NCBI GenBank assembly: GCA_002269645.1
Contig: NIVC01004165.1
Coordinates: forward strand, 1 to 57,170
Reading direction: 5' to 3'
Length of the DNA: 57,170 nucleotides
From: Macrostomum lignano
Taxonomy: Eukaryota
Numbering within the stretch: the stretch's first letter is position 1; every line of letters begins with the position of its first letter. Position numbers and translations under genes: made by a program. Positions 16,186 to 54,683 of this stretch are shown one piece after another. The notes beneath the pieces were generated by a model. The model saw nothing but the letters and a program-made list of their open reading frames with translations. It had not been told where the DNA came from and searched no databases.

Positions 16186-17462
16186 TGTTATGGTTTAGGA
16201 TCTCCGGGGGTCCGGTCAGTTTAGGGTGTCCGGGGCGGAGACCCTAAACGGTTTAGGATCTCCGCCCGGAGACCCTAAACCGTTTAGGATCTCCCCTGGA
16301 GACTTCTAACGGTTATGGGTCTCCGGGGTAGGAGATCTGAAACCGTTTAAGGGTCTCCGGGGCATTTTCAGGTCTCCGCACCCGGAGATCTTAAACCAGT
16401 TTCAGATCTCCCCATAGGAGACTCTAAACCAGTTTCAGCTCTCCGTCAGGGCCGCAAAAACAAAGTCCTGGTTTAGGATCTCCGGTTTCCGATCTCCCCC
16501 CATTTGTGTAAAACCAATGGTCATGGTATTGAACGCGTACATGTATAAGAAGTGGAAAGGCATTTTTATCATCAACGTAGCATTAGTTTTATATGTATAT
16601 GCTCGCACAACTGTGTATTTAAATGGAAAACTGTTTACTGTTAAAGTAATGAAGTAAATGTCCGCTTAGTGAAAAACCGGTGATGCACTTTCAGCCGGTG
16701 CTTGGAGGAAGCATCTCTTGAGGTGTTTCCCATTGACACACATGGTTAGTCCTCCTAGCCTGTACACGTTTTGACCAAGACACCTGGTCACGATGTAGAC
16801 TTGCTGACTCCAAGTGTATCGCATCTTACCACCCTTCCGATCGTCCCTGCGAAGATTGCGAAGCCTAACTCTGTCCCCTCCGCAGTCGTATCGTGCAGTA
16901 AAAAGGCTCACTGTGCTGTTGACACCCACGTGACTTCCTTGCGAGTGAAGGCTGCGGATCTTATCCCGTACCTCTTCCTCTGTGAAAAGTACTCTGCGAT
17001 GGTCTTCAGGCCGCATTCGCTGACTGTCGTCCTTATTAGCCACCCTGTAGTAAAGCGCTCCGTCATGGATGGAGAAACGCTTGCTCTTTTCTCTAATGCG
17101 TCTTTTTAAGTTGGCCTTATCTTTGGCGTCCAATCTGGCTGGTACCTGGGTGTATTCATTGCTTAGGACGTAGAAAAATATTTGATTGAGCGAAGCCATC
17201 AAGCTTTGAAATGCAGAAATCGACGAAAATCACACAGCACAAACCTTTCTTATCATCTGCCCAATGTAAATGTTTACAGCGCTTCCCGCCACCCATAAAA
17301 TATGAGTACAAAGCTGGTCTCCAAAATGTGCAAAGCCTATTGAAAGTTACGCAAGACTGCTCACACTTTGGGGTGCCAATCTCGATGTACATAGAAGTAG
17401 CTATAATTTTCATATAGAAAAACCGCGGAGACCCTAAAACGCGGAGATCCTAAACTCTAACA
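16186..17462 (-). mobile_element. Ginger1-type DNA transposon, internally deleted (non-autonomous)
   Basis: Ends TGTTATGGTTTAGGATCTCCG ... CGGAGATCCTAAACTCTAACA, with a perfect CCGG 4-bp TSD (16182-16185, 17463-17466) and subterminal GGAGACCCTAAAC repeats. TGT ends and CCGG-type TSDs are characteristic of Ginger1. Confidence 0.85.
16666..17202 (-). pseudogene. Gypsy-like integrase/Ginger transposase remnant lacking the DDE core
   Basis: GIN-type N-terminus (KRFSIHDGALYY..RRVL..EE..IRSLHSQGSHVGVNST...RY) fused in frame to a GPY/F-like C-terminus (GDRVRLRN.RRDDRKGGKM.YTW...VY.L...VNGKHLKR). Confidence 0.8.
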
Positions 17463-26310: not shown

Positions 26311-28803
26311 ATGCTGATGCTGAAGGCGGCCTGCCTGCTGCTCCTGGCGGCAGTCGGCAGCGTCCACGGCCAGTGCGGCTGCACGCCCAACGTGAGTTTT
26401 GGCCAGGCTTTTGAGTTGCTTCGTCCAATTTCTTGAGGTATTGTGCAAAGTGTTTTGCCTCATCTCGACTTTGTTGTACTCGAATTTGAGTTTTTACAGC
26501 CCGAAACTGCGGGTCAGAAAAGTTTTGAAATAATAATTGTCTGGAAAAGTACAGCAATTTAATAATTATACATATATGTAGCTAAGCTTTGCACACAAAA
26601 TGTCTCCCCGGACAAGATGTCTCCCCGGACAAGATGTCTCCCCGGACAAAATGTCTCCCCGGACAAAATGTCTCCCCGGACAAGATGTCTCCCCGGACAA
26701 AATGTCTCCGCGGACAAGATGTCTCCCCGGACAAATTGTCTCCCCGGACAAAATGTCTCCCCGGACAAAATGTCTCCCTGGACAAAATGTCTCCCCGGAC
26801 AAAATGTCTCCCCGGACAAAATGTCTCCCTGGACAAAATGTCTCCCCGGACAAAATGTCTCCCCGGACAAAATGTCTCCCTGGACAAAATGTCTCCTCAG
26901 TCAAAAATACTCTCCGGACAAGACTTCACGGACAAACTCTTTGGCAAAAAATTCCCTGAATACTAACCTGAGCCCTTGGGAATCTGAGCCGCCAGTCCCG
27001 CTGCCGTCACCGCGCTGCCACCCCTCCCGCGCCCCCGCAGGCGCCGTTGAGCTACGAGGACCTGAAGGAGGGCCCCATCGGCGACATGATTCTCACGACG
27101 GAGCAGAAGCTCGGCATGCTCGGCGTGAGTGCTCGCGTTTATTTTTTGCTAAAATTGGTTCTGGGGATAAGGTCCCGGTTTCGAATCCAATACTATAGAG
27201 GCGTCCATGGTTCGAATGCTTAAGCCGTTGAATGCCTCAAAGTCAGTTTCTATTAGAAAAATTGGATTGCCGTAAATTGGACTGATTGCGCTCTGAAGTC
27301 CAGCAGGTACTCTAGTTAAGCAACCAAGTGCTGGGCTTAGGCTGAGGACTCAACAGGTTTGCCTTCATCTTGCAGCTGAGGAACGCCCAGACGAACATCT
27401 GGCCCAGGCGCACCCTGGTGTACAGCATCGGCAGCCACATGAGCGGTGAGTTGCGATCGAGGGTTCGAATTTCCGGTTTGCAATAACTCTGCCTTCTGTC
27501 CGGTAAAAGTGCATCCCGGGGCGGCGACGCATTGCAGGCAACGCCAACACCATCGTGGCAGCGCTGCGGTACATCGAGCAGATGACCAACTACTGCGTGT
27601 CCTTCAAGCAGCGCACCAACGAGTACAGCTACGTCTATGTCACCAATGGCGCCGGGTGAGTCTGGTAGGCAGTTGCCATGGCAACACTGACTGCTGGTTT
27701 GAACTCTGGTCATGCAAATTGTTGTCATGGCAACACTGACTGCCGGATTGAACTTTGATTATGCATTGTTGCCATGGCAACACTGACTGCCGGTTCGAAC
27801 TCTGATTGTGCATTATTGCCGTGGCAACACACTACCGTTTATAAATTTACCTCGTTGCTTTGGCACTCTGGGTAGCAAATCTCTGATTTAAGAATGGCGG
27901 GCTGTTGCCATGGAAACAGTGCTGTATGAACTCTGCCTGAACAAGATAGCCAGCTACCATGGCAACGCTGTTACGCGAAATCTGATTGAGCCAGAGAGTC
28001 TGTTGCTATGGAAACTGAAAAAAATGCTGTCGCTTGGCAACTGGCGAACACCCACCCGCAGCTGCTCCTCCTACGTGGGCTACCTGAACCGCGGTCGCCA
28101 GAACCTGTCGCTGGACAACGGCTGCTTCACCCGCGGCACCATCGTGCACGAGTTCATGCACGCCCTCGGCTTCCACCACGAGCAGACGCGCACGGACCGC
28201 GACAGCTACCTCATCATCGACTGGGCCAACATCCTGACCGGTGAGGGACCGGGTGGAAAAGGCGTGGGAGAGGGTGGGAAAGAGGGGTGGGAGATGATTA
28301 AAAAGAGGGGTAGGAGAGGGTAAGAAAAAAGGGTGGGAGAGGGTGGGAAAGAGGGGTGGGAGGGTGGGACAGAGGGGTGGGAGAGAGGGTGAAAAAGAAG
28401 GGTGGGAGATGGTTAGATTGAGGGGTGGGAAAAAGGGTGGGAGAGGGTAATTCTATCGAAGTTCATACAGCGATTTATGAACTAATAGCAAAGAATATAA
28501 AATTTATTGTACCGCTGAGCTTCAATTAATGCCCCCAAAGTCTACTGCAAGTAGAAATATGCGAATTTCCAACATGGAACACCCGCAGCCTACTGCTCGG
28601 CCTACTACAAGTACAGGGGCAACGTGTTCGGCACCTCCTACGACTACAAGAGCTGCATGCAGTACCCGTCCACCGGCTTCGCCTGCCGCCCTGGCGTCCA
28701 CGTGATGCGGCGTCGGGACAACGGCGGCACCGACCTGGGCGACTATTACAACATGTCGGCCAACGACGCCTACAGGATCCGCAAGGCCTACGGCTGCGCC
28801 TAA
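26311..28803 (+). CDS. Secreted astacin-family (M12A) zinc metalloprotease, catalytic domain only
   Basis: join(26311-26391, 27041-27124, 27376-27445, 27538-27655, 28062-28240, 28589-28803). Signal peptide MLMLKAACLLLLAAVGSVHG; prodomain GDMILT; RNA..WP; GCSSYVG; HEFMHALGFHHEQTRTDRD; Met-turn YDYKSCMQY; terminal YGC. AATAAA at ~28842. Confidence 0.96.
26595..26900. repeat. 17-nt minisatellite (AAAATGTCTCCCCGGAC), astacin intron 1
   Basis: Direct tandem units. Confidence 0.95.
27672..28015. promoter_or_regulatory. Cluster of 7-8 RFX X-box motifs in astacin intron 4
   Basis: GTTGCCATGGCAAC (27672, 27768), GTTGTCATGGCAAC (27721), ATTGCCGTGGCAAC (27815), GTTGCCATGGAAAC (27904), GCTACCATGGCAAC (27953), GTTGCTATGGAAAC (28002), and a degenerate site at 27854. 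Confidence 0.7.
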
Positions 28804-28997
28804 GCTGCAAATATCGGCACTCACTACGAGCTATCCTGTGAAATAAAGTTGTTGAGGTGGCGGTTGTCAGTCACGTGACCGATGTTTTAATCTTGCGGAC
28901 ATCCCGTCTTTACTTTTGAACTTAATGTAGCTGTTTCTCTGCTGAGGTTTACATCCAGCTGTATCAGAACATGTAGGATTCTGTCGGTATCACTTCA

Positions 28998-31400
28998 GTG
29001 ATTCTCATAGAGATCAGGGAGAGTGATTCTCATAGAGATCAGGGAGAGTGACTGTCATAGAGATCAGGGAGAATGACTGTCATAGAGATCAGGGAGAGTG
29101 ACTGTCATAGAGATCAGGGAGAGTGATTCTCATAGAGATCAGGGAGAATGACTGTCATAGAGAACAGGAGAGTGATTCTCATAGAGATCAGGGAGAGTGA
29201 TTCTCATAGAGATCAGGGAGAGTGATTCTCATAGAGATCAGGGAGAATGACTGTCATAGAGATCAGGGAGAGTGACTGTCATAGAGATCAGGGAGAGTGA
29301 CTGTCATAGAGATCAGGGAGAGTGATTCTCATAGAGATCAGGGAGAGTAATTCTCATAGAGATCAGGGAGAGTGATTCTCATAGAGATCAGGGAGAGTAA
29401 TTCTCATAGAGATCAGGGAGAGTGATTCTCATAGAGATCAGGGAGAGTGATTCTCATAGAGATCAGGGAGAGTGATTCTCATAGAGATCAGGGAGAGTGA
29501 TTCTCATAGAGATCAGGGAGAGTGACTGTCATAGAGATCAGAGAGAGTGATTCTCATAGAGATCAGGGAGAGTGATTCTCATAGAGATCAGGGAGAGTGA
29601 TTCTCATAGAGATCAGAGAGTGATTCTCATAGAGATCAGGAGAGTGATTCTCATAGAGATCAGGGAGAGTGACTGTCATAGAGATCAGGGAGAGTGATTC
29701 TCATAGAGATCAGGGAGAGTGATTCTCATAGAGATCAGGAGAGTGATTCTCATAGAGATCAGGGAGAGTGATTCTCATAGAGATCAGGGAGAGTGATTCT
29801 CATAGAGATCAGGGAGAGTGATTCTCATAGAGATCAGGGAGGGTGATTCTCATAGAGATCAGGGAGAGTGATTCTCATAGAGATCAGGGAGAGTGACTGT
29901 CATAGAGATCAGGGAGAGTGACTGTCATAGAGATCAGGGAGAGTGATTCTCATAGGGATCAGGGAGAGTGATTCTCATAGAGATCAGGGAGAGTGACTGT
30001 CATAGATATCAGGGAGAGTGACTGTCATAGAGATCAGGGAGAGTGACTGTCATAGAGATCAGGGAGAGTGACTGTCATAGAGATCAGGGAGAGTGATTCT
30101 CATAGAGATCAGGGAGAGTGACTGTCATAGAGATCAGAGAGAGTGATTCTCATAGAGATCAGGGAGAGTGACTGTCATAGAGATCAGGGAGAGTGACTGT
30201 CATAGAGATCAGGGAGAGTGACTGTCATAGAGATCAGGGAGAGTGATTCTCATAGAGATCAGGGAGAGTGACTGTCATAGAGATCAGGGAGAGTGATTCT
30301 CATAGAGATCAGGGAGAATGACTGTCATAGAGAACAGGAGAGTGATTCTCATAGAGATCAGGGAGTGATTCTCATAGAGATCAGGAGAGTGATTCTCATA
30401 GAGATCAGGGAGAGTGATTCTCATAGAGATCAGGGAGAGTGACTGTCATAGAGATCAGGGAGAGTGATTCTCATAGAGATCAGGGAGAGTGATTCTCATA
30501 GAGATCAGGGAGAGTGACTGTCATAGAGATCAGGGAGAATGACTGTCATAGAGATCAGGGAGAGTGACTGTCATAGAGATCAGGGAGAGTGATTCTCATA
30601 GAGATCAGGGAGAATGACTGTCATAGAGAACAGGAGAGTGATTCTCATAGAGATCAGGGAGAGTGATTCTCATAGAGATCAGGGAGAGTGATTCTCATAG
30701 AGATCAGGGAGAATGACTGTCATAGAGATCAGGGAGAGTGACTGTCATAGAGATCAGGGAGAGTGACTGTCATAGAGATCAGGGAGAGTGATTCTCATAG
30801 AGATCAGGGAGAGTAATTCTCATAGAGATCAGGGAGAGTGATTCTCATAGAGATCAGGGAGAGTGATTCTCATAGAGATCAGGGAGAGTGATTCTCATAG
30901 AGATCAGGGAGAGTGACTGTCATAGAGATCAGAGAGAGTGATTCTCATAGAGATCAGGGAGAGTGACTGTCATAGAGATCAGGGAGAGTGATTCTCATAG
31001 AGATCAGGGAGAGTGATTTTCATTGAGATCAGGGAGAGTGATTCTCATAGAGATCAGGGAGAATGACTGTCACAGAGATCAGGGAGAGTGACTGTCATAG
31101 AGATCAGGGAGAGTGACTGTCATAGAGATCAGGGAGAGTGATTCTCATAGAGATCAGGGAGAGTGATTCTCATAGAGATCAGGGAGGGTGATTCTCATAG
31201 AGATCAGGGAGAGTGACTGTCATAGAGATCAAGAGAGTGATTCTCATAGAGATCAGGGAGAGTGATTCTCATAGAGATCAGGGAGAGTGATTCTCATAGA
31301 GATCAGGGAGAGTGATTCTCATAGAGATCAGGGAGAGTGATTCTCATAGAGATCAGGGAGAGTGACTGTCATAGAGATCAGAGAGAGTGATTTTCATAGA
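28998..31400. repeat. 25-nt satellite, ~2.4 kb (GATTCTCATAGAGATCAGGGAGAGT / GACTGTCAT variant)
   Basis: Direct tandem units lying between the convergent astacin and NUDT9 3' ends. Confidence 0.97.
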
Positions 31401-31849
31401 GAAATGAGTGTGATTGTCACAGAGATCAGAAAACGAGAAAACGCCTAGACTCAAAGCCGATGAAGGCATTAAATTACGTCATGTGTATAAAGGATGACTA
31501 TAAGTTTATTAGTGTGGAAAATAGGTCAGTGCTAGAGTACATCATTATTCAGTTGGCTTCCTGCAAGCGCTGATCTGCGTGGCAAGGCCGAGTTACAGAA
31601 GTCTGTCACTTGACAACTGCGATTGTCATTAAGGGCTGACCTCTGCAGTCTTAAGCGCATCCAAAGCTATGATACGAGCATAGGCTCATTTTTGTGAGAC
31701 AGTTTGAAGTAAGTCTACTTAAGATGCCGAGGAAAATCTTAGCAAAAATAATAGAAAAGGCCTGGCTGTGGTCAGCCTGCTTGGCGTGACCTGCTGCTGA
31801 AGATTGAAAGATGGAAGCTGCAAACTTCTGAGAGATTGGCAGGCGGGCA

Positions 31850-41900: not shown

Positions 41901-43668
41901 TGCTACTCAAATGCTACTCAGTGGCTACTCAGTTGCTACTCAGTTGCTACTCAAATGCAACTCAGTTGCTACTCAAATGCTACTCAGTGGCTACTCAGTG
42001 GCTACTCAGTTGCTACTCAGTTGCTACTCAGTTGCTACTCAAATGCTACTCAGTGGCTCCTCAAATGCTACTCAGTGGCTCCTCAAATGCTACTCAGTTG
42101 CTACTCAGTGGCTACTCAGTGGCTACTCAGTGGCTACTCAGTTGCTACTCAGTTGCTACTCAAATGCTACTCAGTTATACTGAGCAAAAGCGGTGCGAAA
42201 TCAGCCACCTGTCGGGGCTCCGAGCTGCATTCGGGCGCCAGCTCCAGATGTAGTTTCTGCAGGCAGTCGGCAGGCAGGAAGCGGTCAGTCAGCAGGCAGG
42301 CCAGCATTGGCAGGCGGTCAGCGCTGAGGCCCAGCAGGCCGCACAGGCGGGGCAGCAGCGCCTGGCGCATCTGCAGCTGCTGGTAGCCGTGGAAAGCCCT
42401 GCCGCCCGCTGGGCTCAGCGAGTTCAGCAGCAGCAACGAACGGTTGGGCGGCTGCAGCAGCCAGCAGAGCGGCGAGTCACTGGCGATGGCGCGGCAGCCG
42501 ATGTTGGTAGAGATACGGGCGCACTCAGCCAAGCGGCTGTCCAGGGACTGCTGGCACGGTACCTCCAGGCGGCGCAGGCAGAAGCGCAGTGCTGTGACGA
42601 GGCCCGGGGGCGGCAGCCACAGCGAGAAAGCCGGGCGGGGCCAGGTCTGCTGCGCCTGGGCACCTGCAGCTGGCTGCAGCTCGCGCAGGTACCTGGGGGA
42701 TCGGAAAAGCGGCAAGTAAAGGTAACTGAGCTGGAACACTCAAAGTTCGGCATGTAGAGGAACAGGAAGGAGCAAAGAGAGGTAAGAGTAAGAGGGGTAA
42801 AGGGAGAAGAGAGGTCAAGAGGGTAGTGTTTAAGAAGATATAAGATACAAGAGTAGAGGGGTAAAGAGGGTAGAGGAAGGGCCCAAGAGGGTAGAGGTCA
42901 TGAGGGTAGAGGAAGGGGCCAAGAGAGTAGAGAGGTCATGAGGGTAGAGGGGTCAAGAGGGTAGAGGGGTCAAGAGAGTTGAGAGGTCATGAGGGTAGAG
43001 GGCGGGGTCAAGAGAGTAGAGGTCATGAGGGTAGAGGGAGGGGTCAAGAAGGTAGAGGGGTCAAGAGAGTTGAGAGGTCATGAGGGTAGAGGGCGGGGTC
43101 AAGAGAGTAGAGAGGTCATAAGGGTAGAGGGAGGGGTCAAGAGGGTAGAGGGGTCAAGAGGGTAGAGGGGTCAAGAGAGTAGAGGGGTCATGAGGGTAGA
43201 GGGAGGGGACAAGAGAGTAGAGAGGTCATGAGGGTAGAGGGGGTATCCAGTGCCCAGCCCGCACCGGATAATCGTGGCCACCCGGTGCTTTCTCCCCCGC
43301 TGCTCGGCGGCCCAGTCGAGCTTGTCGCAGTGGCTGGCGCCGCCGTCCCCCGGCAACAGCGGCATGGGCAGGAAGAGGCTCGCCTGGAAGTCGCGCAGGC
43401 GGGCCGCCAGGTTGAGCCGCAGGCCGCGCCAGTCGCAGCCGCAGAGCCAGCCGGTGCGGGGCCCGCAGATCCAGCGGAGGCTGTCGCCGAGGTCAATGAG
43501 GACGGCCGGCTGCTTGCCGCTGATGGGCCGCTGACCGGCCGTCAGGTCGCTGCCATCGGGCTGGCTAGTCAGCAGGGTGTGCAGAGTGCTGAGGCTCACC
43601 AGCTGGTGGAACTCCTCCACGGGCTGCCGGCTGGTGAGCTCGTGCAGGCAGCGGGACAGGCTGCACAT
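38965..43668 (-). CDS. FAM120: FAM120-family (PIN-like, constitutive coactivator of PPAR-gamma-like) protein
   Basis: join(43668-43265, 42692-42209, 41849-41755, 41314-40903, 40293-38965). FAM120-like motifs: VLIDLGDSLRWICG...W..G.DW, WLPPPGL..ALRFCLRRL.V..QQS, LGLSADRLPMLACLL, LHPWVAQVL...EVRI, LQLASLFAAGLDTAVFVSDACG, FDGRRFQ, LLLCEG. Confidence 0.88.
40385..40880. repeat. ~66-nt minisatellite, FAM120 intron 4
   Basis: Direct tandem units. Confidence 0.93.
41345..42175. repeat. 30-nt (41345-41705) and 11-nt (41870-42175) minisatellites in FAM120 introns 3 and 2
   Basis: GGCGGACACACCTGGGATCGGGGAGGGGGT and GCTACTCAGTT units. Confidence 0.93.
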
Positions 43669-43965
43669 TGTGGGCTGCGGACTGCTGCAAAAGGGGGGCG
43701 GCGTTGGGACTTCTGACACAGGGCTCGACTGGGGCTGACACAGAATACCTGTAGATTTATTGATGTAATCAATTGTAAGGCTAATAAAATCGAAATTAAT
43801 TGCAAGGCAAGTCACGCAACATACTACTTATACTGAAACACATGAAAGTGACAGTTAAAATGTAATTGATTATAAATATGACAGAATGCAGGCAAGCAAA
43901 ATGCTATCAGTTTAGATACATATCGGCCGCGGCCAATGAACTAAAAGGTTATAAGAAGATTCCAG

Positions 43966-44989
43966 TCAGCCGGTCCACTTTAAGCAGCGAGTGTCCTGGT
44001 GGGTGCTGTAGCAGGAGGCGGAACAGAAGCGGGTGCCGCAGACCACGCAGGTGTGCGGACCCAGCAGGCCGCAGACCGCACAGAAATGGCGGGGCGGCAG
44101 GCGGGACGGCCCCACCTGCGCCAGCTCGTACGGAGTGGCCGCCGAGCCGGACGCAGAGGCGCCGGGAAGCTGCGCCCGCCTGGCCAGCTCCTCCTCAAGC
44201 AGCGCGGCAAAGTTGCGGCGCAACCGGCCGCCGAGTGTCCCGACTGCGCCGGAGCCGCCCGCCGCCTTGGCTTTGCGCGACTTTTTACCTGTGGGATTTG
44301 GGTTTGGTTGGGGATTTTTACTGCGCTGCTACTCACTGAGGCACCAGGGGAGTGCAGGAGGGGTCAGGAGGACCAGGAGGTGAGAGGACCAGGTGAGGTG
44401 GGGCCAGGAGGACCAGGTGAGGTGGGGCCAGGAGGACCAGGTGAGGTGGGGCCAGGAGGACCAGGTGAGGTGGGGCCAGGAGGACCAGGTGAGGTGGGGC
44501 CAGGAGGACCAGGTGAGGTGGGGCCAGGAGGACCAGGTGAGGTGGGGCCAGGAGGACCAGGTGAGGTGGGGCCAGGAGGACCAGGTGAGGTGGGGCCAGG
44601 AGGACCAGGTGAGGTGGGGCCAGGAGGACCAGGTGAGGTGGGGCCAGGAGGACCAGGTGAGGTGGGGCCAGGAGGACCAGGTGAGGTGGGGCCAGGAGGA
44701 CCAGGTGAGGTGGGGCCAGGAGGACCAGGTTCAAGCGAGGACCAAAGTGCTCACCATCGGCAGACGCAGCCACCCCACCCAAGGCATCCCGTGACGGCCC
44801 GAAGGAAGAGGCCTCGTCGGAGAACTTTGGCGCCAGCTTGCTGACCCGCAGGTCGGCGTGTGGATCGGCCTGGAAGTTGTCGGCCTCGAGGGCCTCCAGG
44901 GCGCGGCGGTGGCGGCGCTGGCGGGCGGCCTCGTCCAGCACCAGGCGGCGGGTTTCGCGCAGCCGAGAGGAGACGCCGGCGTCAACCAT
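43966..44989 (-). CDS. ZNHIT1: Zinc finger HIT domain protein 1 (SRCAP/SWR1 subunit, Vps71)
   Basis: join(44989-44755, 44288-43966): VLDEAARQRRHRRALEALEADNFQADPHA...RRNFAALLEEE...PPRHFCAVCG...HTCVVCGTRFCSASCYSTHQDTRCLKWT*. Confidence 0.96.
44375..44730. repeat. 27-nt minisatellite filling the ZNHIT1 intron
   Basis: GAGGACCAGGTGAGGTGGGGCCAGGAG units. Confidence 0.96.
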
Positions 44990-47900
44990 GGCTGGCTGAA
45001 GTCACTGGCAGGAAGGTGACGGACACATGAGAAAATAATGACAGATATTTCATGCTTTGCCTGCTTTGGTTTGAAAACTGCAAGCTCAATAATGATCTCT
45101 GCATCGGCTTAAACTTTGGACAGCTACATTTAGTTTGATAATGATAGCATGTGGGATAAAGTACACACAAAACTCTGACTAACTCCCCTGATATCCCTGC
45201 AGATATATCCATATACCTGTGTGCCTGCTAAGGGGAGTCAATGGAATGGGCAGTAATGCCTCTTGTTAGTTAATTCACAATGTCATTTAAAATTCACCAG
45301 TGTGCATATAGTCCTTTGGCTCTAACTAATCAAACTAAAAATATGAATTATAGAATGGCAGAATAAATATGCAAACATATAGAAATATGAAATATTACAC
45401 ATAGGCATATACTCACTATAGCTTTTTCTAATTCAAATTTTACTTAAATTATTAATAATTAAGAGAAATTTAGACTGACCAATCCAGAATCTAGATACCT
45501 AGACTAGAATAATTTGACAAAAATTAAAAACAACTCCATTAGAATACTTTTGCTGTTTTAATTTTCTTAGGATTTTTAAATCTTAACAGTATAAAAGCAT
45601 AAGATAGAGAAATTAACATTTTATTCAATTTTGGAGTTTTTTACTAATTAGCTAAGATTATGTTTTATATTTGGCATCTTGAATTTGGAGCTATGATGAC
45701 AAATAGGACTATGATTATGCTTAAAAAACCTAGCTAAGGAGTAATACTAAGAATAAGAAGCCTTATTGGAATAAATGTTTAAACAAAAGTTAATGGTAAA
45801 CAAATGTAAACAGAGATAAATTTGAAGCTAAGAGGGGATGATATTTTAGTAATAATGCTAAAAAGACTAATAGGAAGTAATAGAAAAAATGTTAAAGGAG
45901 ATACTAACAGAAAGACATTAAGGCCAGGGAAAGTATAATACTAAGGCCATAAGGGGAATGATGTTAAGGAAGGATAAATTTAAAGAAGGAATTTTGATAA
46001 GAAAGAATGATATCTAAAAAAGAAAAAGGAATGATGCCAATAATAATATAGAATACTGAATAGAGCTAAAATGGAAATAAGAACTTAGAAGCAAAGCAAA
46101 AGAAAGAGGGATAAATATATTGACTATTAATGTATGACTAGGCTTATTGCCAATACATGACTTAACCATTTAAAAATAAGAAAAAAAGATATTTAGATAT
46201 TCAGATGTCTAAATTATTCTAATATTTTATATAGGCCTATACTTCTTGAAATAAGGCTTAGGCCTATACATATGTGGTAGGGCGATCTACCACTGCACAA
46301 TGAACATGATGATGCCGTGTGGTGACACTTGCTCATGACCCTCTGTTTTTTCACTCGGTGCACCGTCCCTTGCCCCATCCCTCGCCCCATCTTTTGCCAT
46401 TGCTCAGTTTTTTTTGTTAATTCCCATTTGCGGCTTTAGTGTCGTTTACTGCCCCATTGTCTGCCCCATTCCTTGCCCCATCCTTTGCCTTCCTACCCTA
46501 TCTATTGCCCCATCCCTGTTTAGACAACATTGTTTCCCTTATTTATAAGGCCATTTTGGGCCACCTTTGGTTAACTCCCCCTTTTTCTGCAGTTTGTGCT
46601 CGTTCATTAATATTTGTGTTTATCCAGTTTCTGTTTTAATAGTATAGTGTTTGTAGTCTTTGCCTCTACTAAGTAAGTCTTACAGTTTCGCTTAATAGTC
46701 ATTCAGCACCTAGCACCTAGCATTCTCATGAAATTAATATTCATCCCTAATAACTACTGCTTGCGCAATTAACAATAATAATTAATAATAATTTACTAGT
46801 TGTTCATTTACCTAAGCCATTGACAGTTTATCTTGAGTTATTTGCCTGTGGGGCATTAAACAACCAAACTCATCTCATCTCCAAATGAGCTCTGAGATCT
46901 CAACATTCCGCAATATAAAATTATGGTGGTGGCAGCGCTATTCTACTGATAGTAATCAGCTCAACAACTCAAACAGATTTATGGTGTCTAGACCATTGAG
47001 TCTACAAATCTGAACAACCGGGCTGCTATATGACCGCTCTGCTATGATTGCGACTACCCTCCCCCTGGACTTGAGGACCTGGCTGTCGGAATAAAGGAGA
47101 AGAAATTTGTTGTGATTCGTATGCGCAATTTTCCAGCTTTATTTGTACAAACTCAATACTGGCGGCAATTCAAACGTGGAATCCACCCTACCTCACTGGT
47201 GTCAGCAAATTTTCAAACCAACTCATTCCAAAAAAAACTTCTCCACCTCCACCTCACATATATTAGATAGACTAATAATAAGGACTCCAATGAGTCTGAT
47301 CATTGGATGATCAGATCTTATCTGATGAATGTATCTGATAGAGGACACTAATAGCATCATAAAATGTAATAAATCCATTTTTGCTTAAAAATAAAATTAG
47401 GTCCTAATAAACTAGGCTTCTACAGTTTTACTAGATTAGTTAGGTAGGGCCTAATGGAAGCAATTTTATATGCTATTAAATAATTTTAATATAGTAAATA
47501 TTTTAATATTACATTGAATTTGCTTTTAGTTTAGTTTAGTTAGTTTATTAGACAGTCAAGTCAAGCTGAAACCTATAGAAAATTCTCACAGAAGAGAAGG
47601 GAAACTTTGCATTGAAGTTTCTTATATAAATTTGGGCAAAATTTGGAGGTTGATGATATAGTTTATAAATAGCATATGATTTAAGTCTAAGGTTTCTATT
47701 TCCATTTCATATTATACCATAAGAAGGCATTAAGACACATGGTATATAAGTACGAGTATATTAATATTATATTAGGCCCTAATACATTGGTATAAAATGG
47801 CAACATGTTATAGTTTGGTTAGAAAAATCTTCTATTTAGTATTTACATTACATTTCAGCCCAATAAGTTAAGAAGAGACATTATAGCAATCATATATAAT

Positions 47901-48286
47901 CCTAGTCTAAGTCTAAGAAGACTAAAGACATAGTAGTGTAAGACCAATACCTGGTCTACTCTTACCCACATTAGGCCTTCTCCCTTTTCCCACCTATAGC
48001 CTACCATGGGCCCCGCCATATGGTGTTTGCAGGATTATGTTCACTTGAGCACTTGATTTGCTGTTTAAAATGTATGATAACTAATTGATTATTCAGATTA
48101 TTTCTTTACTTCATAGAACTATTTTAATAGACTCGTATTTAATATGTACCCGTGCCAATTATTTTATAGGAAAGGTATATCAAGTAATTTATTATAATTA
48201 AGGGAAAATGATTAATTCAAATACTTGCATGGTACTAAATAGGCTAACTAATAATTCGTCGTGTTAGTGTTGATGAATTGAGTAAA

Positions 48287-49423
48287 AGGACGGGAAACCT
48301 CGTTTCTTAGAAAATTTTAGAAGGCAGGTTTTCCCGAAAAAATACTTCGTACACTTCGGAGATAGGAAGTTTTCATTTTTTCAGCACAAAAATTGTTATT
48401 GCTTTTGATAGGAGGCAGATCCAGAGTTCATCTTTTGATATGTTGTGCCTTTCTTATTGCTCTATTGATATTCGTAAAGCTTTTCGTTCAAAAAATTAGG
48501 ATTCTATGTTAATTTTTTATTCTACGTACATTTGCACGTGTCTTGTACCTAAAAACCATTACAATGGCACGGCCAGGGGCGTAGCCAGGAATTTCCTACG
48601 GGGGGGGGATACACCAAGGTGAATTTCCTACGGGGGGATACACCAAGGTAAAAGTGCTCACATGGTAGCATGTATAGCGAAAAAGTGCAACAAAAAAGTT
48701 TTGGTCAGGCTCTTCGGGGGGGGATACATCCCCCCTGATCCCCCCCTCCCTACGCCACTGGGCACGGCTCAGCTCTTTGGCTTTATGATTCTATTTTATC
48801 ATTCTTAGCTGACTGTGTAACAAATATGTGTAACAGAGATGATAAAATAGATTCATAAAACCATAGATTGGAGTTGTGCTATGCATTTTATGAGTTTTAG
48901 GTACAGCAAAAATACGTTGAATAAAAATTAACATAGAATCCTAGCTAATTTTTTGAACGAAAAGCTTTACGAATATCGATAGAGCAATAAGAAAGGCACA
49001 ATAAACACATATCAAAAGATGAACACTGGATCTGCCTCCTATCAAAAGCAATAACAATTTTTGCGCTGAAAAAAATGAAAACTTCCTGTGACGTTGTCAG
49101 TTGAGGTGGCCCCGACAAGGACCGTTTTAGCGAAAGCAGTGCCATTCTATAATATTCTTTATTTGATGGTCTCGATCGTACTCTAACGTCTGCTTATAGT
49201 AATGTCCAAGGAATTTTAAACAACATTGCGTGACGTTCGTAAAGCCTATGTGCAATGCGATCGATAATTTCTGTTTTCAAGTCGGTTTTTGCGCCGGCCA
49301 ATAGGAAAGCCGCCCATATATTATGCTAGCCTGAAATTACGCTTGTATCGTGCACCCACCCCCAGCCCGCTCGTTAGAAAACCTGCCTTCTAAAATTTTC
49401 TAAGAAACGAGGTTTCCCGTCCT
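48287..49423. mobile_element. MITE with long inverted arms (AGGACGGGAAACCTCG...CGAGGTTTCCCGTCCT)
   Basis: 48287-48340 pairs with ~49372-49423, and ~48375-48530 pairs with ~48915-49086. No TSD seen. Confidence 0.75.
48574..48760. mobile_element. hAT-type MITE, 187 bp, nested in the larger MITE
   Basis: CAGGGGCGTAG...CTACGCCACTG ends, with a perfect 8-bp TSD GGCACGGC (48566-48573, 48761-48768). Confidence 0.9.
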
Positions 49424-50265
49424 ACTTAAGTCGTCCTTGGTTAGTGTTATGAAAGTGTAAAACTGCGATCTTACAGTTTAATCAATTCACTCTACTAGCG
49501 ATACGCCGACATGACAAGCAACATGCCAACATGCTCGAACAAAATTCGTATTCAATAAATATGCTGCATTTTTTAGTTTTCGGCATTGTGAAATTTCATA
49601 CAGTCTTTTGAAGCGCCTCTCATGATGGCCTGCTATCATGCAATCGTCCATCGCCTTCAATTCTGTTCACGCATTTCTTTCACCGATTCACCCCATTAGT
49701 AGTGAAATAATGATCAATATTCGCATACTGTTTAGGCTGCCTTTGTTTGCTGAGGGCGGTCCTGCAGTCCGAAGCCCCACTAGCTGACCGCCCCGATCGA
49801 GAGGTTGGCGTTGTTCCAGATTGAGCATAGACCATCCTGATTTACAAGGAACGCATATGGAACAAATAAAACAAGTGGTGCACATCGAAAATCGCTCCTG
49901 ACTCGGAGCACCAGTTAGACACGCGCGCTCGTATCGAGCTGGAACTTGACCAAAATCTTTTCCAAGCTGCAGTTTTACTGCTGTATATAAACTTTCACGG
50001 TCTCACATTTTGCATGCATATTTATTTTTTTTCAAGTTGAATAGTGATGCAACGGAACGCAGCTACAGCGCTTCCTGCTGTGTTTAACGTTGGTTTAGAT
50101 AAACAATATGAAGTCATCGATTCATACAACCACATTTTTATTTTTTACCTGTTTAGTTTCGAGAATTTGTACTCAAAACATTGAACTATTTGTAAATTTC
50201 AAGGTTATAATTATAGTTTTATTTTTTATTTTAATCACGGTATCCTGGTCGTTATAAAAACTTAA

Positions 50266-53200
50266 TTAAGCAGCCGGCAGCTTCACCTGCCGGGTCTTCT
50301 TGTTGACTGCCTTCGCGATCAGGCGCAGAAACAATATTAAGCCCGTGCCGCTAAGAAGCCCTGAAATTATTTTTGATGAAGCAACTTTGATTAAATTTAT
50401 ATTTATGCTTAAGTGTGGGAACTTGATTAAAAATGTGTACCTGTATAGATTGTACACAGAACATACAACAGAGCTAGTCTACTCTCTCTAAGTCAAGTAA
50501 ATCTGGATTGAGAAGATCTAGAGAAACTCATGGGAAACTGAGAAATCATGTGCATGTACATGCATGTATAGGACACCTGGGAGCAGATTAGAGCTACTAA
50601 TCGATTTTACAAGTAGGCACATACATTAAGGATGTACTCGTAAAATTTCCATACGAGATGAAGATGTACATGCAGCTCATAATTCTCGGGGAGTGCGGGA
50701 ACCCGAATGCAAGGATTCCGGTTGAGGGTGAGGGCGGAGATGTTGGTCAGGGGAAGTGGATTGGGTCCAGGCTCATAACTGTCTGAATTGCAACATGCAG
50801 AGTACGAGTAGATTGTAAATTTTTCTTTCCTGCAAAAGTGCCGGCTATGATTATATAGAAATCCCTCTGAGTAGGAACAACAGGCGGCTCTCGCTGGTAC
50901 CGGCAAACTGAAATTCATGTATGGAAAATCAATGCAAACATCCCGAATCATAATCTCAGATCCCGAATCATAATCTCAGATCCCGAATCATAATCTCAGA
51001 TCCCGAATCATAATCTCAGATCCCGAATCATAATCCCAGATCCCGAATCATAATCTCAGATCCCGAATCATAATCTCAGATCCCGAATCATAATCTCAGA
51101 TCCCGAGTCATAATCTCAGATCCCGAATCGTACAGTAATCTCTGATCCCGAATCGCATAGTAATCTCAGATCCCGAATCGCATAGTAATCTCAGATCCCG
51201 AATCATAATCTCAGATCCCGAATCATAATCTCTGATCCCGAATCGTAATCTCAGATCCCGAATCATATAGTAATCTCAGATCCCGAATCATAATCTCAGA
51301 TCCCGAATCATAATCTCAGATCCCGAACCATAATCTCAGATCCCGAATCATAATCTCAGATCCCGAATCATAATCTCAGATCCCGAATCATAATCTCAGA
51401 TCCCGAATCGTATAGTAATCTCAGGTCCCGAATCATAATCTCAGATCCCGAATCATATAGTAATCTCAGGTCCCGAATCATAATCTCAGATCCCGAATCG
51501 TAATCTCAGATCCCGAATCGTAATCTCAGATCCCGAATCATAATCTCAGATCCCGAATCATAATCTCAGATCCCGAATCATAATCTCAGATCCCGAATCG
51601 CATAGTAATCTCTGATCCCGAATCGCATAGTAATCTCTGATCCCGAATCATAATCTCAGATCCCGAATCGCATAGTAATCTCTGATCCCGAATCGCATAG
51701 TAATCTCTGATCCCGAATCATAATCTCAGATCCCGAATCGTAATCTCAGATCCCGAATCGTAATCTCAGATCCCGAATCGCATAGTAATCTCTGATCCCG
51801 AATCGCATAGTAATCTCAGATCCCGAATCGCATAGTAATCTCAGATCCCGAATCGCATAGTAATCTCAGATCCCGAATCGCATAGTAATCTCTGATCCCG
51901 AATCGCATAGTAATCTCAGATCCCGAATCGCATAGTAATCTCAGATCCCGAATCGCATAGTAATCTCAGATCCCGAATCTGATCCCGAATTGCCATCCCT
52001 GATCCCGAATTGCCATCCCTGATCCCTAATTGCCATCCCTTATCCCTAATTGCCATCCCTGATCCCGAATTGCCATCCCTGATCCCTAATTGCCATCCCT
52101 GATCCCTAATTGCCATCCCTGATCCCGAATTGCCATCCCTGATCCCGAATTGCCATCCCTGATCCCGAATTGCCATCCCTGATCCCGAATTGCCATCCCT
52201 GATCCCGAATTGCCATCCCTGATCCCGAATTGCCATCCCTGATCCCGAATTGCCATCCCTGATCCCGAATTGCAACCATAAGTGTCTATTTAACCTTTCA
52301 AAATGCTCCATAAGCAATTAGCAATTCCATGAGTTCCCCATCGCCCCAGATGGCAGACCTGGCAGCCCGGAGCGCTGGCACACGGTGCGCACCACGTGCG
52401 ACTCGTCGCCGCAAGGGTCCCAGGGCGGCACAGTGGCGCAGGCGTAGTCCGCCAGGTTGCCATCGTAGTTCACCACTCCGCAGGCCTCGCCGCAGTGGGC
52501 GTTGCTGGGCTCGGAGCGGCTCCACTCGACGCCGGTCCGGTTGTCGGTCCGGCTGAAATCGCTGGTGCTCAGCGGCGGCTCTTCGGGCCCGTCGGTGTAC
52601 CAGCGCCACAGGTCCTGGTCACCAGCTGCTGCGGGATCGGCGTTGACGGGTGAAACTGAGGGGCTGGGTCAGACAGCTGCCAGGCTCGGGTCAGACAGAG
52701 GTCAGGCTCGGGTCAGACAGAGGCCAGGCTCGGGTCAGACAGCTGCCAGGCTCGGGTCAGACAGAGGTCAGGCTCGGGTCAGACAGAGGCCAGGCTCGGG
52801 TCAGACAGCTGCCAGGCTCGGGTCAGACAGAGGTCAGGCTCGGGTCAGACAGAGGCCAGGCTCGGGTCAGACAGAGGTCAGGCTCGGGTCAGACAGCGCC
52901 CAGGCTCGGGTCAGACAGCGGCCAGGCTCGGGTCTGACAGCGCCCAGGCTCGGGTCAGACAGCGCCCAGGCTCGGGTCTGACAGCGGCCAGGCTCGGGTC
53001 AGACAGAGGCCAGGCTCGGGTCAGACAGAGATCGAGGGTCAGACAGCGCCCAGGCTCGGGTCAGACAGCGCCCAGGCTCGGGTCTGACAGCGGCCAGGCT
53101 CGGGTCTGACAGCAGCCAGGCTCGGGTCAGACAGAGGCCAGGCTCGGGTCAGACAGAGGCCGGGCTCGGGTCAGACAGAGATCAAGGGTCAGACAGCGCC

Positions 53201-54683
53201 CAGGCTCGGGTCAGACAGCGTCCAGGCTCGGGTCTGACAGACTCGAGCCAGGCTAGGGTCTGACGGGGGCCTGAACTGGACAGTGGTTTCTTGATGAGGA
53301 CGTTGAAGGGTGGGTTAGGGGCGGGTCAGTAGCGAGACTTATTCTGGTTTCAGGACCGGTGGGTTCAAGGCAAGAGTCAAGCAAGTGAATAAAGGAAAAG
53401 TTAAGTGGGTCAGGGGTGAGGTTGGTGGGTCAGAGGTGAGGTTGATGGGTCAAGGGTGAGGTTGATAGGTCAAGGATGACGTTGGTGGGTCAGGGGTGAG
53501 ATTGATGGGTCAGGGGTGAGGTTGGTGGGTCAGGGGTGAAACAGGGAGAGAATCAAAGGATCCCGATCTAGGTTTGTGAGACGGGGTCAGAGTTAAGGTT
53601 TGGTTGGTCAGGGGTTCGAGTGAATAGGAGAGTGGTTGCGAACCTGAAAACCGTTTTTTGCAGCCTAGCAGAGTGAAAATCACTGGCACTCTGAGAGCCC
53701 TCGCGCACCGCACCTTCAGCGCGCACCACGCCAACCCAGATGCGATGGTTCTGGGCGTAGCTGCGCAGAGTCTGCCAGGCGAACTGGGTGCGCAGCACCG
53801 GCAGCGTGGCGTTGAACAGGGCGCAGAACTCGGCGGCCTGGCGCCAGGTGAGGAAGATCCGCGCGTGGAGCTGGAACAGGCAGTGGTGCTCGCTGCTGTA
53901 CTCCGTGACCGGCAGCTTCGGCACCGGACTTGGGTCACCGATGATGGCCGGAGCGAGGACGGCCGCGGAGATGCGACCTGAGTAGCCTGGAGTTGATGGG
54001 CGGAAGGTGAACTTATTGAGCTCTCAGGTCTCACAGAGAAATCTATTGATGCCACAAAAGCCTTTACATTCAGTCAGATTCTTTTAGCATCAGCAGCAAT
54101 TGCCAGGAGCATTGATAGGTAGATATTAATAGAATCAAGAACAGTATAATCCGAGGCAGGAGCAGCCAGTGCCAGAGGCAGCAACAGCCAGTGCCAGAGG
54201 CAGCAACAGCCAGTGCCAGAGGCAGCAACAGCCAGTGCCAGAGGCAGGAGCAGCCAGTGCCAAAGGCAGCAACAGCCAGTGCCAGAGGCAGCAACAGCCA
54301 GTGCCAGAGGCAGGAGCAGCCAGTGCCAGAGGCAGCAACAGCCAGTGCCAGAGGCAGGAGCAGCCAGTGCCAGAGGCAGCAACAGCCAGTGCCAGAGGCA
54401 GCAACAGCCAGTGCCAGAGGCAGCAACAGCCAGTGCCAGAAGCAGGAGCAGCCAGTGCCAGAGGCAGGAGCAGCCAGTGCCAGAGGCAGGAGCAGCCAGT
54501 GCCAGAGGCAGGAACAGCCAGTGCCAGAAGCAGGAGCAGCCAGTGCCAGAGGCAGCAACAGCCAGTGCCAGAAGCAGGAGCAGGTAACAGAGGCTCACAG
54601 AGTTTCTGAGGCAGCGCGCACTGCAGCGGACAGGCGAAGCACAGAAGCGCGAAGCCGAGCCTGCAAACCAAAGTCGACTTCAT
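50266..54683 (-). CDS. C-type lectin domain protein, probably type I transmembrane
   Basis: Signal exon 54683-54599 (MKSTLVCRLGFALLCFACPLQC). CTLD exons from 53977 (HCLFQ...LTWRQAAEFCALFNATL...IWVG) and from 52655 (WRW...WSRSEPSN...EAC...GNLADYAC...VC). Probable continuation via CAG|GTCTGC at 52359 to exons starting at 50907 and at 50360-50266, giving TM plus tail. Otherwise the protein ends at 52318. Confidence 0.75.
50935..52270. repeat. Two abutting ~20-nt minisatellites sharing the core GATCCCGAAT
   Basis: TCAGATCCCGAATCATAATC (with a 25-nt variant) to ~51975, then GATCCCGAATTGCCATCCCT. Confidence 0.95.
52665..54585. repeat. Minisatellites in lectin introns: 22-nt (52665-53250), 20-nt (53410-53540), 22-nt (54150-54585)
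   Basis: GGCTCGGGTCAGACAGAGGCCA, GGGTCAGGGGTGAGGTTGGT and GCCAGTGCCAGAGGCAGCAACA units. Confidence 0.93.

What the first reader, a model, noticed from the sequence alone, without database searches (positions are those of the whole stretch)
27672..28015. Phased array of 7-8 RFX X-boxes inside an astacin intron: candidate ciliary enhancer built from a minisatellite
Seen: seven matches to the RFX palindrome GTTGCCATGGCAAC (two perfect) start at 27672, 27721, 27768, 27815, 27904, 27953 and 28002. Spacings are 49, 47, 47, 89, 49, 49, and a degenerate site at 27854 splits the 89. The first four units share their spacer (recent tandem duplication). In the last three the spacer has diverged while the X-box is kept. 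Known: RFX factors bind X-boxes to drive ciliary and sensory-neuron genes, usually through one or two sites near a promoter. Inference: a tandem repeat has been co-opted as a homotypic RFX enhancer for the protease or a neighbour. In a genome where each intron carries its own minisatellite, this could be a general way of creating enhancers.
Basis: partly seen in the sequence, partly recalled or inferred. Interest (0 to 1): 0.8.

Follow-up and report, generated by a model that had tools for sequence, protein, structure and literature searches.

The report
Flatworm intron minisatellite built on RFX sites
An intron of a flatworm (Macrostomum lignano) protease gene is almost entirely a decaying tandem repeat whose core is a textbook RFX binding site; the array is real and statistically unusual, but nothing yet shows that it is an enhancer or has anything to do with cilia.

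Summary
Seven matches (0-2 mismatches) to GTTGCCATGGCAAC sit at the stated coordinates. A degenerate eighth site lies at 27854 and a ninth half-site at 28029. Together they fill intron 4 (27656-28061) of a secreted astacin gene of Macrostomum lignano.

The window holds 49 minisatellites. This is the only one with a palindrome longer than 8 bp, and 9 of the window's 12 GTTGCCA heptamers lie in this intron.

The array has two generations: three young 47-49-bp units plus a truncated fourth, then four or five old units. In the old units the X-box is the best-kept block (47/56 vs 74/141 positions, p=4e-5). A second block (GAAYTCTGATT) is also kept.

Two other genomic copies of the locus give no significant evidence of constraint (2 of 17 differences fall in motifs, 4.7 expected, P=0.11). 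One copy has one unit fewer. Site 5 is broken in two of the three copies.

No identified neighbour is a canonical ciliary gene, and the array is not promoter-proximal.

Best reading: a minisatellite-amplified cluster of RFX-competent sites with possible weak regulatory use. "Ciliary enhancer" is unsupported.

Side finding: perfect X-boxes form the core of unrelated tandem repeats in about 14 independent metagenomic contig families.

The parts
26311..28803 (+). Secreted astacin metalloprotease gene (= M. lignano BOX15_Mlig012299g1-type). Six exons: 26311-26391, 27041-27124, 27376-27445, 27538-27655, 28062-28240, 28589-28803.
   Evidence: Protein search, protein sequences, tblastn exon map, splice borders read from sequence.
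27656..28061 (+). Intron 4 (406 nt, GT..AG, phase 2). About 90% of it is the X-box array.
27672..27853 (.). Young sub-array: units 1-3 (49, 47, 47 bp; spacers 80-87% identical) plus truncated unit 4 (39 bp). TRF reports period 47, 3.3 copies, 86% matches over 27672-27830. The L001 copy has one unit fewer here.
27854..28041 (.). Old sub-array: units 5-8 (50, 49, 49 and about 27 bp) plus a terminal half-site. Spacers are near the random-alignment level except for one conserved block.
27672..27685 (.). X-box 1, GTTGCCATGGCAAC (perfect).
27721..27734 (.). X-box 2, GTTGTCATGGCAAC (1 mismatch; fits GTHNYYATRRNAAC).
27768..27781 (.). X-box 3, GTTGCCATGGCAAC (perfect). With flanks it is a 16-22-bp palindrome.
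   Evidence: I10.
27815..27828 (.). X-box 4, ATTGCCGTGGCAAC (2 mismatches; right half-site perfect).
27854..27867 (.). Site 5, GTTGCTTTGGCACT. The right half is broken by a 1-nt deletion in the window and in L002; it is intact (GTTGCTTTGGCAAC) in L001.
27904..27917 (.). X-box 6, GTTGCCATGGAAAC (1 mismatch).
27953..27966 (.). X-box 7, GCTACCATGGCAAC (2 mismatches; right half-site perfect).
28002..28015 (.). X-box 8, GTTGCTATGGAAAC (2 mismatches; GTTGTTATGGAAAC, 3 mismatches, in L001).
28029..28041 (.). Ninth, partial site, GTCGCTTGGCAAC (perfect TGGCAAC half-site; 13 nt).
   Evidence: Read from sequence; it is one arm of inverted repeat I9.
27797..27807 (+). Reference copy of the second conserved spacer block, GAACTCTGATT. 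Other copies start at 27701, 27750, 27878 (AATCTCTGATT), 27928 and 27977. Nothing is known to bind it.
   Evidence: D4.

Best explanation
The feature is an intronic minisatellite of Macrostomum lignano whose roughly 48-bp unit is built around a full, high-affinity RFX dimer site (X-box).

Shown:
- It arose by tandem duplication in at least two waves: old units 5-9 and young units 1-4.
- It is still unstable. Unit number differs between genomic copies.
- In the window copy it presents five sites that fit published X-box consensus forms. Including these, seven units keep a strong GTTGCCA or GTTTCCA half-site next to a weaker partner.

Inferred: the X-box is not there by chance, and its preferential retention in the old units reflects binding of an RFX dimer. 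The array would then act as a redundant homotypic cluster of RFX sites inside the astacin gene. Individual sites would be dispensable, so selection on the cluster would be weak. The effect would be modulation of transcription of the astacin or a neighbour in RFX-expressing cells.

The direction of any effect (activation or repression) and the target gene are unknown. The label 'ciliary' is not justified by the neighbourhood.
For: - Exact 14-bp consensus twice and five further matches at <=2 mismatches, all confined to one intron. Intron density of GTTGCCA is about 400 times that of the rest of the window.
- It is the only one of 49 minisatellite units in the window with a palindrome longer than 8 bp. 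A palindrome of 16 bp or more in any unit occurs in about 2% of shuffles.
- In old units the motif matches at 47/56 positions against 74/141 for the (generously gapped) spacer, Fisher p=4e-5. An alignment not anchored on the motif gives 83% against 61%, p=8.5e-4, with the X-box as the best 14-column window.
- Decay is what protein recognition predicts, not what structure predicts. There are no compensatory changes, self-complementarity is lost in units 5, 7 and 8, and single-strand hairpins are weak (-1.4 to -5.1 kcal/mol). Yet a GTTGCCA or GTTTCCA half-site persists in every unit of the window copy except unit 5, where it is intact only in L001. This fits the rule that one RFX half-site is the strict one.
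- The RFX recognition sequence is conserved from fungi to animals. A flatworm RFX DNA-binding domain 78% identical to human RFX1 exists.
- Synthetic 3x full X-box repeats are sufficient for DAF-19-dependent reporter expression in C. elegans, while half-site repeats are not.
- X-box-cored tandem repeats recur in about 14 unrelated contig families.
Against: - There are no occupancy, accessibility or expression data.
- The array is 1.36 kb inside the gene, whereas X-boxes normally sit at promoters in ones or twos. No X-box lies at any 5' end in the window.
- No identified neighbour is a ciliome gene.
- Between the three genomic copies the deficit of changes in motifs is not significant (2 of 17, 4.7 expected, P=0.11). 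One site is broken in two copies, one is weakened in the third, and unit number varies.
- In young, TRF-defined arrays (this one and 11 others) the motif is no better conserved than the spacer.
- The un-anchored test has a weak null: the best window in shuffled sequence averages 0.78.
- A second, non-RFX block is also conserved.
- The genome is 15% simple and tandem repeats, so a neutral origin is the default expectation.
- RFX in M. lignano itself was not verified.
Confidence: 0.45

Rival explanations
1. Neutral minisatellite. One more product of the slippage or unequal-exchange process that has filled this genome with tandem repeats. Its unit happens to contain an X-box, either by chance or because the unit derives from a dispersed repeat or transposon family that carries one. 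RFX may or may not touch it, and it has no selected function. The apparent retention of the core would reflect short-tract homogenisation, or ascertainment, since old units are recognisable only because the core survives.
For: - There are 49 arrays in 57 kb, and 15% of the genome is simple or tandem repeat.
- Copy number varies and sites have been lost among the three copies.
- There is no significant constraint between copies (P=0.11), and no motif-over-spacer difference in young arrays.
- The host gene is non-ciliary and the position is non-promoter.
- In another organism a 145-bp X-box repeat is dispersed over several contigs, one of them carrying a reverse transcriptase. X-box-bearing dispersed repeats therefore exist.
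Against: - A perfect 14-mer inside a given unit is improbable. My estimate, from about 49 arrays per 57 kb and 4^14 possible 14-mers, is roughly 0.1-0.4 such arrays expected per 760-Mb genome.
- It is the only long palindrome among 49 arrays.
- The motif is better kept than the spacer in old units even with a generous spacer alignment.
- The unit occurs nowhere else in the window or in the flanks of the two other copies.
Confidence: 0.35
2. Structure-driven element. The palindrome matters as a nucleic-acid structure. One form would be DNA hairpins or cruciforms that promote slippage and so create and maintain the array. The other would be pre-mRNA duplexes between units that compact the intron and help splicing.
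For: - The intron RNA folds better than shuffles: -142.6 kcal/mol, z = -4.6, with X-boxes of different units paired.
- The palindrome extends to 16-22 bp in young units.
- Ten inverted-repeat pairs lie within the intron.
Against: - The fold z-score follows automatically from repeating any self-complementary word.
- Single-unit DNA hairpins are weak and no better than shuffles for most units.
- Old units have lost symmetry without a single compensatory change, yet keep RFX-type half-sites.
- No other minisatellite in the window needs a palindrome to exist.
- No Rfam family matches.
Confidence: 0.07
3. Binding array for a different factor, for example NFI-type proteins recognising TGGCA half-sites, or an unknown flatworm dimeric factor. 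Such a factor might act together with whatever recognises the second block, GAAYTCTGATT.
For: - The best-conserved core is ATGG[C/A]AAC, which contains TGGCA.
- A second conserved block at a fixed offset suggests a composite element.
Against: - The full 14-bp match to the RFX consensus is exact in two units and follows RFX degeneracy rules in three more.
- The half-site arrangement (TGCCA immediately followed by TGGCA) is not the NFI palindrome TTGGC-N5-GCCAA (from my own knowledge).
- The second block is not significantly enriched in the window: 6 hits against 3.0 expected.
Confidence: 0.05

Closest known systems
X-box promoter motifs bound by RFX factors (C. elegans DAF-19, Drosophila Rfx, vertebrate RFX1-3)
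   Same: Same sequence. GTTGCCATGGCAAC is the consensus palindrome and is quoted verbatim in three papers, two of them on Drosophila cilia genes. The degeneracy seen in the array follows GTNRCC-N0-3-RGYAAC and GTHNYYATRRNAAC. One half-site is stricter than the other.
   Different: Natural X-boxes are single or paired and cluster at transcription start sites of ciliome genes. Here eight or nine sites sit in intron 4 of a secreted protease gene with no ciliome neighbour.
VNTR or minisatellite regulatory elements that iterate a transcription-factor site (for example MNS16A at TERT with GATA-1 sites, PMC5438627)
   Same: A factor motif is multiplied by tandem duplication, copy number varies between alleles or copies, and the location is intragenic or near a gene.
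   Different: There are no functional data here. The factor and the organism differ, and part of the array is old and degenerate rather than a homogeneous VNTR.
Synthetic tandem X-box reporters (3x klp-6 X-box variant, DAF-19M study, bioRxiv 10.1101/2021.02.03.429678)
   Same: Several full X-boxes in tandem. These were shown to be sufficient for RFX-dependent expression, while half-site repeats were not.
   Different: The reporters are artificial, tightly packed and placed upstream of a reporter gene. The flatworm array is natural, has a 47-50-bp period and is intronic.
Minisatellites with a conserved core within variable units (Jeffreys-type core sequences; from my own knowledge)
   Same: A short core is shared by otherwise divergent repeat units, and copy number is unstable.
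   Different: The classical core is G-rich and chi-like, and is thought to promote recombination. Here the core is a transcription-factor palindrome.
The general tandem-repeat load of the M. lignano genome (Wudarski et al. 2017, PMC5730564)
   Same: It is one of 49 arrays in the window. The published figure is 15% simple and tandem repeats, with large duplicated blocks at 95% identity or more; this explains the three copies of the locus.
   Different: It is the only array in the window with a long palindrome or a recognisable factor consensus, and one of the few that is old and degenerate.

Membership tests
RFX X-box cis-regulatory site | 13-14-bp imperfect inverted repeat matching GTNRCC-N0-3-RGYAAC (or GTHNYYATRRNAAC) | tested here: met
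   Two perfect sites. Seven sites lie within 1 mismatch of GTNRCCNNRGYAAC on at least one strand. Five sites fit GTHNYYATRRNAAC exactly (0.24 strand-hits expected by chance).
RFX X-box cis-regulatory site | An RFX factor with a canonical DNA-binding domain exists in the organism | tested here: inconclusive
   A search with the human RFX1 DNA-binding domain (checked against PDB 1DP7) returned 368 hits. They include a flatworm (Trichobilharzia) domain at 78% identity, but no M. lignano entry among the 120 rows shown. Presence is expected from the near-universal distribution of RFX in animals.
RFX X-box cis-regulatory site | Promoter-proximal position, usually one or two sites near the transcription start | tested here: not met
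   The array starts 1.36 kb downstream of the ATG, in intron 4. There are eight or nine sites. No X-box lies at the 5' end of any gene in the window.
RFX X-box cis-regulatory site | The linked gene is a ciliome or RFX-dependent gene | tested here: not met
   The host is a secreted astacin. Identified neighbours are NUDT9_N, FAM120A-like, the last exon of a DEG/ENaC channel 27 kb upstream, and zf-HIT and weak Lectin_C exons. Dependence of their expression on RFX cannot be tested here.
RFX X-box cis-regulatory site | RFX occupancy in vivo or binding in vitro | not testable with these tools
   Needs CUT&RUN/ChIP or a gel-shift assay.
Minisatellite / VNTR | Head-to-tail units of about 10-100 bp | tested here: met
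   TRF: period 47, 3.3 copies, 86% matches. The repeat finder: 7-copy family at 47-49-bp steps.
Minisatellite / VNTR | Copy-number variation between alleles or copies | tested here: met
   L001 has one young unit fewer (359-nt against 406/407-nt intron).
Homotypic TF-site cluster or VNTR enhancer | Motif under stronger constraint than the intervening sequence | tested here: inconclusive
   Old units: yes (47/56 against 74/141, p=4e-5; 83% against 61%, p=8.5e-4). Young units: no (94.6% against 93.1%). Between copies: 2 of 17 events fall in motifs against 4.7 expected, P=0.11.
Homotypic TF-site cluster or VNTR enhancer | Enhancer activity or open chromatin | not testable with these tools
   Needs ATAC-seq and a reporter transgene.
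Dispersed TE-derived repeat | The same unit (core plus spacer) occurs at many unlinked loci | tested here: inconclusive
   There is no other copy in the 57-kb window or in the flanks of L001 and L002, and no similarity to any of the metagenomic arrays. The M. lignano genome as a whole could not be scanned.
Structured intronic RNA | Match to a known RNA family, or covariation supporting a fold | tested here: not met
   No Rfam hit at E<=1. No compensatory changes in the palindrome arms. The fold z-score of -4.6 is explained by the repeated self-complementary word.

The most novel reading that the evidence does not exclude
X-box-cored tandem repeats are a recurrent, independently evolved class of element in animal and other eukaryotic genomes; this flatworm array is one instance and the roughly 13 eukaryote-like metagenomic families are others. 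Either homotypic RFX-site arrays are repeatedly selected as regulatory modules, or a tightly RFX-bound palindrome itself provokes local tandem duplication, for example as a replication-fork barrier. In the second case a transcription-factor site would drive the birth of its own minisatellite.
Probability: 0.2. Interest if true: 0.7.

Novelty: new member of a known kind. Interest (0 to 1): 0.4.

Why it matters
If RFX does bind and the array modulates transcription, it would be a natural example of a minisatellite turning one transcription-factor site into a redundant homotypic cluster. M. lignano suits the test: transgenesis exists (PMC5730564) and tandem repeats make up 15% of its DNA. It would also extend RFX cis-architecture beyond the usual one or two promoter X-boxes.

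The wider lead may matter more than this locus. Perfect X-boxes recur as cores of unrelated tandem repeats in many eukaryote-like contigs. This points to either repeated co-option or a mechanistic link between a bound palindrome and tandem duplication. Both can be tested with genome-wide scans against control palindromes.

If the array is neutral, the locus is a cautionary case. A perfect consensus multiplied by a repeat-generating genome can look like an enhancer without being one.

Tried and rejected
- **Orthologous intron.** The only close relative outside M. lignano (P0002, 73% identity) is an intron-less 904-nt transcript contig, so there is no cross-species intron comparison.
- **RFX in M. 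lignano.** The search with the RFX DNA-binding domain listed mostly short fragments and no M. lignano entry. I ran no further search on it.
- **Literature.** I found nothing on Mlig012299, nothing on RFX in Macrostomum, and no paper on natural X-box tandem repeats.
- **Pfam on long ORFs.** Twenty long window ORFs gave nothing useful. Bulk scans of the flanks found only ASC, zf-HIT and weak Lectin_C.
- **Un-anchored alignment test.** The test on the old units works, but its shuffled null is weak because permissive gaps inflate identity. I give it little weight.
- **RNA-structure reading.** Rejected as the main explanation: the z-score is a by-product of repetition, there is no covariation and no Rfam hit.
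- **Helical or nucleosomal phasing.** Rejected. The steps are 4.5-4.7 helical turns here, and periods elsewhere range from 20 to 145 bp.
- **Control for the metagenome result.** A composition-matched control palindrome could not be run because that collection allows one scan. The prokaryotic (2 hits) and viral (0 hits) collections are only partial baselines.
- **Forkhead or other partner motifs.** I looked at the spacers by eye only. Nothing was convincing and I make no claim.
Full report
**What is in the sequence**

A motif-agnostic repeat finder recovers the same seven-copy family with spacings 49/47/47/89/49/49. The 89-bp gap is split by a degenerate site at 27854. A ninth, partial site (GTCGCTTGGCAAC) lies at 28029-28041.

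This is far beyond chance.
- The C. elegans-type consensus GTHNYYATRRNAAC gives 11 strand-hits in 57 kb against 0.24 expected, ten of them here.
- Nine of the window's 12 GTTGCCA heptamers lie in this 406-nt stretch.

**Host gene and organism**

The array fills intron 4 (27656-28061, GT..AG, phase 2) of a six-exon gene on the + strand. The exons are 26311-26391, 27041-27124, 27376-27445, 27538-27655, 28062-28240 and 28589-28803.

The gene encodes a 248-aa secreted astacin with an intact HEFMHALGFHHEQTRTDRD zinc site. Its product is essentially identical to Macrostomum lignano BOX15_Mlig012299g1.

The public assembly GCA_002269645.1 holds two further copies of the locus, L001 and L002. They are about 93-98% identical to the window. 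This fits the published redundancy of that genome, which has large duplicated blocks at 95% identity or more, and 15% simple and tandem repeats.

**Anatomy of the array**

- Units 1-3 (49, 47, 47 bp) are young, with spacers 80-87% identical.
- Unit 4 is truncated to 39 bp and only partly similar to them.
- Units 5-8 (50, 49, 49 bp and a short last unit) are old. Their spacers are 28-71% identical to the young ones, against a shuffled null of 46 +/- 9%.

The old spacers are not wholly random. A second block, about GAAYTCTGATT, survives in units 1-3 and 5-7.

In the young units the palindrome extends to 16-22 bp.

**Is the X-box special here?**

The window contains 49 distinct minisatellite arrays. 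Their longest palindromes are 0-8 bp, except for this one at 16 bp. Shuffled units reach 16 bp or more anywhere in about 2% of trials. Long palindromes are therefore not a general property of this genome's minisatellites. This palindrome is also letter for letter the RFX dimer consensus, a sequence that three papers (two of them on Drosophila cilia genes) quote verbatim.

A rough estimate of my own uses about 49 arrays per 57 kb, units of about 40 bp and 4^14 possible 14-mers. It gives only 0.1-0.4 such arrays per 760-Mb genome by chance.

**Constraint: mixed evidence**

Within the array, old units match the consensus at 47/56 motif positions but only 74/141 spacer positions, even with generous gapped alignment (p=4e-5). 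Aligning the whole old part to the young consensus without anchoring on the motif gives 83% against 61% (p=8.5e-4). The X-box is the best 14-column window, although the shuffled null for 'best window' is high at a mean of 0.78, so this test is weak.

The substitutions are not compensatory. Units 5, 7 and 8 have largely lost self-complementarity and hairpin potential. Yet every unit of the window copy except unit 5 keeps GTTGCCA or GTTTCCA on the minus strand, and unit 5 keeps it in L001. This fits the published rule that one half-site of the RFX motif is the strict one.

Three observations argue against constraint.
- **Young arrays.** In young TRF-defined units, here and in 11 unrelated arrays, the motif is no better conserved than the spacer.
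- **Comparison of copies.** Between the window and L001 there are 17 independent differences, of which 2 fall in motifs against 4.7 expected (P=0.11).
- **Site and unit changes.** Site 5 is intact in L001 but carries a 1-nt deletion in the window and L002. Site 8 is weaker in L001. L001 has one young unit fewer.

Individual sites are evidently dispensable.

**Context**

No X-box-like site lies at the 5' end of any gene in the window. The array is 1.36 kb downstream of the astacin ATG, whereas RFX motif instances cluster at transcription start sites.

Genes identified in the window:
- the astacin;
- a NUDT9_N-domain gene and a FAM120A-like gene downstream on the minus strand;
- the last exon of a DEG/ENaC channel at 374-706, 27 kb upstream;
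- zf-HIT and weak C-type-lectin exons somewhere in 42-57 kb.

None is a canonical ciliome gene. The 'ciliary' part of the interpretation has no support. Only three of the astacin's five introns hold a minisatellite.

**Rivals**

- **Structure.** An RNA or DNA structure role is unlikely. The intron's fold z-score of -4.6 follows automatically from repeating a self-complementary word. Single-unit hairpins are weak, there is no covariation and no Rfam match.
- **Neutral origin.** A neutral minisatellite is the serious rival. The X-box would be there by chance or inherited from a dispersed repeat family. This fits the genomic background, the copy-number instability and the lack of significant constraint between copies. 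It does not easily explain the exact consensus or its preferential survival in old units.
- **Transposon origin.** I could not scan the M. lignano genome, so a transposon-derived origin remains open. The unit occurs nowhere else in the sequence held.

**Plausibility of RFX action**

RFX half-site recognition (GTTRCY) is conserved from fungi to animals. A flatworm RFX DNA-binding domain 78% identical to human RFX1 is in the database (query checked against PDB 1DP7), although M. lignano's own RFX was not seen. In C. elegans, synthetic 3x tandem full X-boxes suffice for DAF-19-dependent reporter expression, whereas half-site repeats do not. A natural array of full X-boxes could therefore plausibly work as an RFX-dependent module.

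**An unexpected wider pattern**

I scanned the metagenome collection for two perfect X-boxes 25-50 bp apart. This returned 29 contigs. After masking the X-box they fall into 14 unrelated families, none similar to the flatworm unit.

Most are tandem arrays with a perfect X-box core and family-specific spacers. Periods are 20, 39, 49, 51, 55, 61 and about 145 bp, with up to 13 consecutive units.

The same pattern finds only 2 loci in 596 Gb of prokaryotic genomes and none in viral contigs.

Contexts are heterogeneous.
- One array sits directly upstream of a rhodopsin-type GPCR ORF.
- One family lies near a reverse transcriptase.
- One family has dense long ORFs with the palindromes between them.

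The lead is worth testing.

**Verdict**

The sequence-level reading, 'an RFX X-box multiplied by a minisatellite', is sound. The functional reading, 'ciliary enhancer, general enhancer-making mechanism', is unsupported.

My probabilities:
- about 0.45 that the array is a genuine, weakly constrained cluster of RFX-binding sites with some cis-regulatory effect;
- about 0.35 that it is a neutral repeat, whether by chance or transposon-derived;
- the remainder to structural or other-factor explanations.

It is a new member of a known kind, a minisatellite carrying transcription-factor sites, and of moderate interest.

Noticed in passing
L004-L032 (metagenome contigs), e.g. L022:306-820, L010:4902-5448, L005:5589-5700, L011:8996-9489: Perfect X-boxes form the core of tandem repeats with unrelated spacers in 14 independent contig families. 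Periods are 20, 39, 49, 51, 55, 61 and about 145 bp. The same pattern gives only 2 hits in 596 Gb of prokaryotic genomes and 0 in viral contigs. No control palindrome could be run.
   Followed up: partly
L027:7-365 and ORF 654-1742: An X-box array with about 145-bp period lies immediately upstream of a single-exon rhodopsin-family GPCR ORF (Pfam 7tm_1, E=4e-21). The contig appears to come from an animal.
   Followed up: partly
L016, L018, L023, L030: A soil-metagenome family in which perfect X-box palindromes, single or paired 39-45 bp apart, lie between long dense ORFs about 1.5 kb apart. It looks prokaryote- or virus-like, so these are probably intergenic palindromic repeats unrelated to RFX. 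The ORFs have no Pfam match.
   Followed up: partly
window 887-1747 and 1789-2768: Two large arrays built on the same 16-bp motif in opposite orientation: TTCACTAGGCCGAAAC, then its reverse complement TTTCGGCCTAGTGAAG. Together they form an inverted pair of tandem arrays of about 0.9 kb per arm.
   Followed up: no
window, whole (49 arrays); compared with L001 and L002: The window is a third copy (about 93-98% identical) of a locus present twice in GCA_002269645.1. Many of its minisatellites differ in copy number between the copies; for example the 25-bp array at 28997-31429 is much longer in the window.
   Followed up: partly
window 28251-28430 (astacin intron 5): A G-rich 23-bp repeat (GGGTGAGAAAGAGGGGTGGGAGA, 7.9 copies) with many GGG runs on the coding strand. 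It may be able to form G-quadruplexes.
   Followed up: no
window 28589-28803 (astacin exon 6): The Met-turn region reads SCMQY instead of the usual SxMHY. The zinc-binding motif HEFMHALGFHHEQTRTDRD is intact. The 73%-identical relative P0002 shares SCMQY.
   Followed up: no
window 374-706 (+): C-terminal exon of a DEG/ENaC (amiloride-sensitive sodium channel) gene (Pfam ASC, E=7e-12, profile positions 399-455 of 455). The rest of the gene lies upstream of the window.
   Followed up: partly
window 16236-16445: Two short arrays (periods 31 and 33) whose units are themselves inverted repeats (GGAGACCCTAAAC-G-GTTTAGGATCTCC). They are hairpin-type repeats of unknown origin.
   Followed up: no
window 42000-57170: A zf-HIT exon (E=4e-7) and a weak C-type-lectin match (E=7e-4) are encoded somewhere in this stretch. 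I did not locate the ORFs.
   Followed up: no
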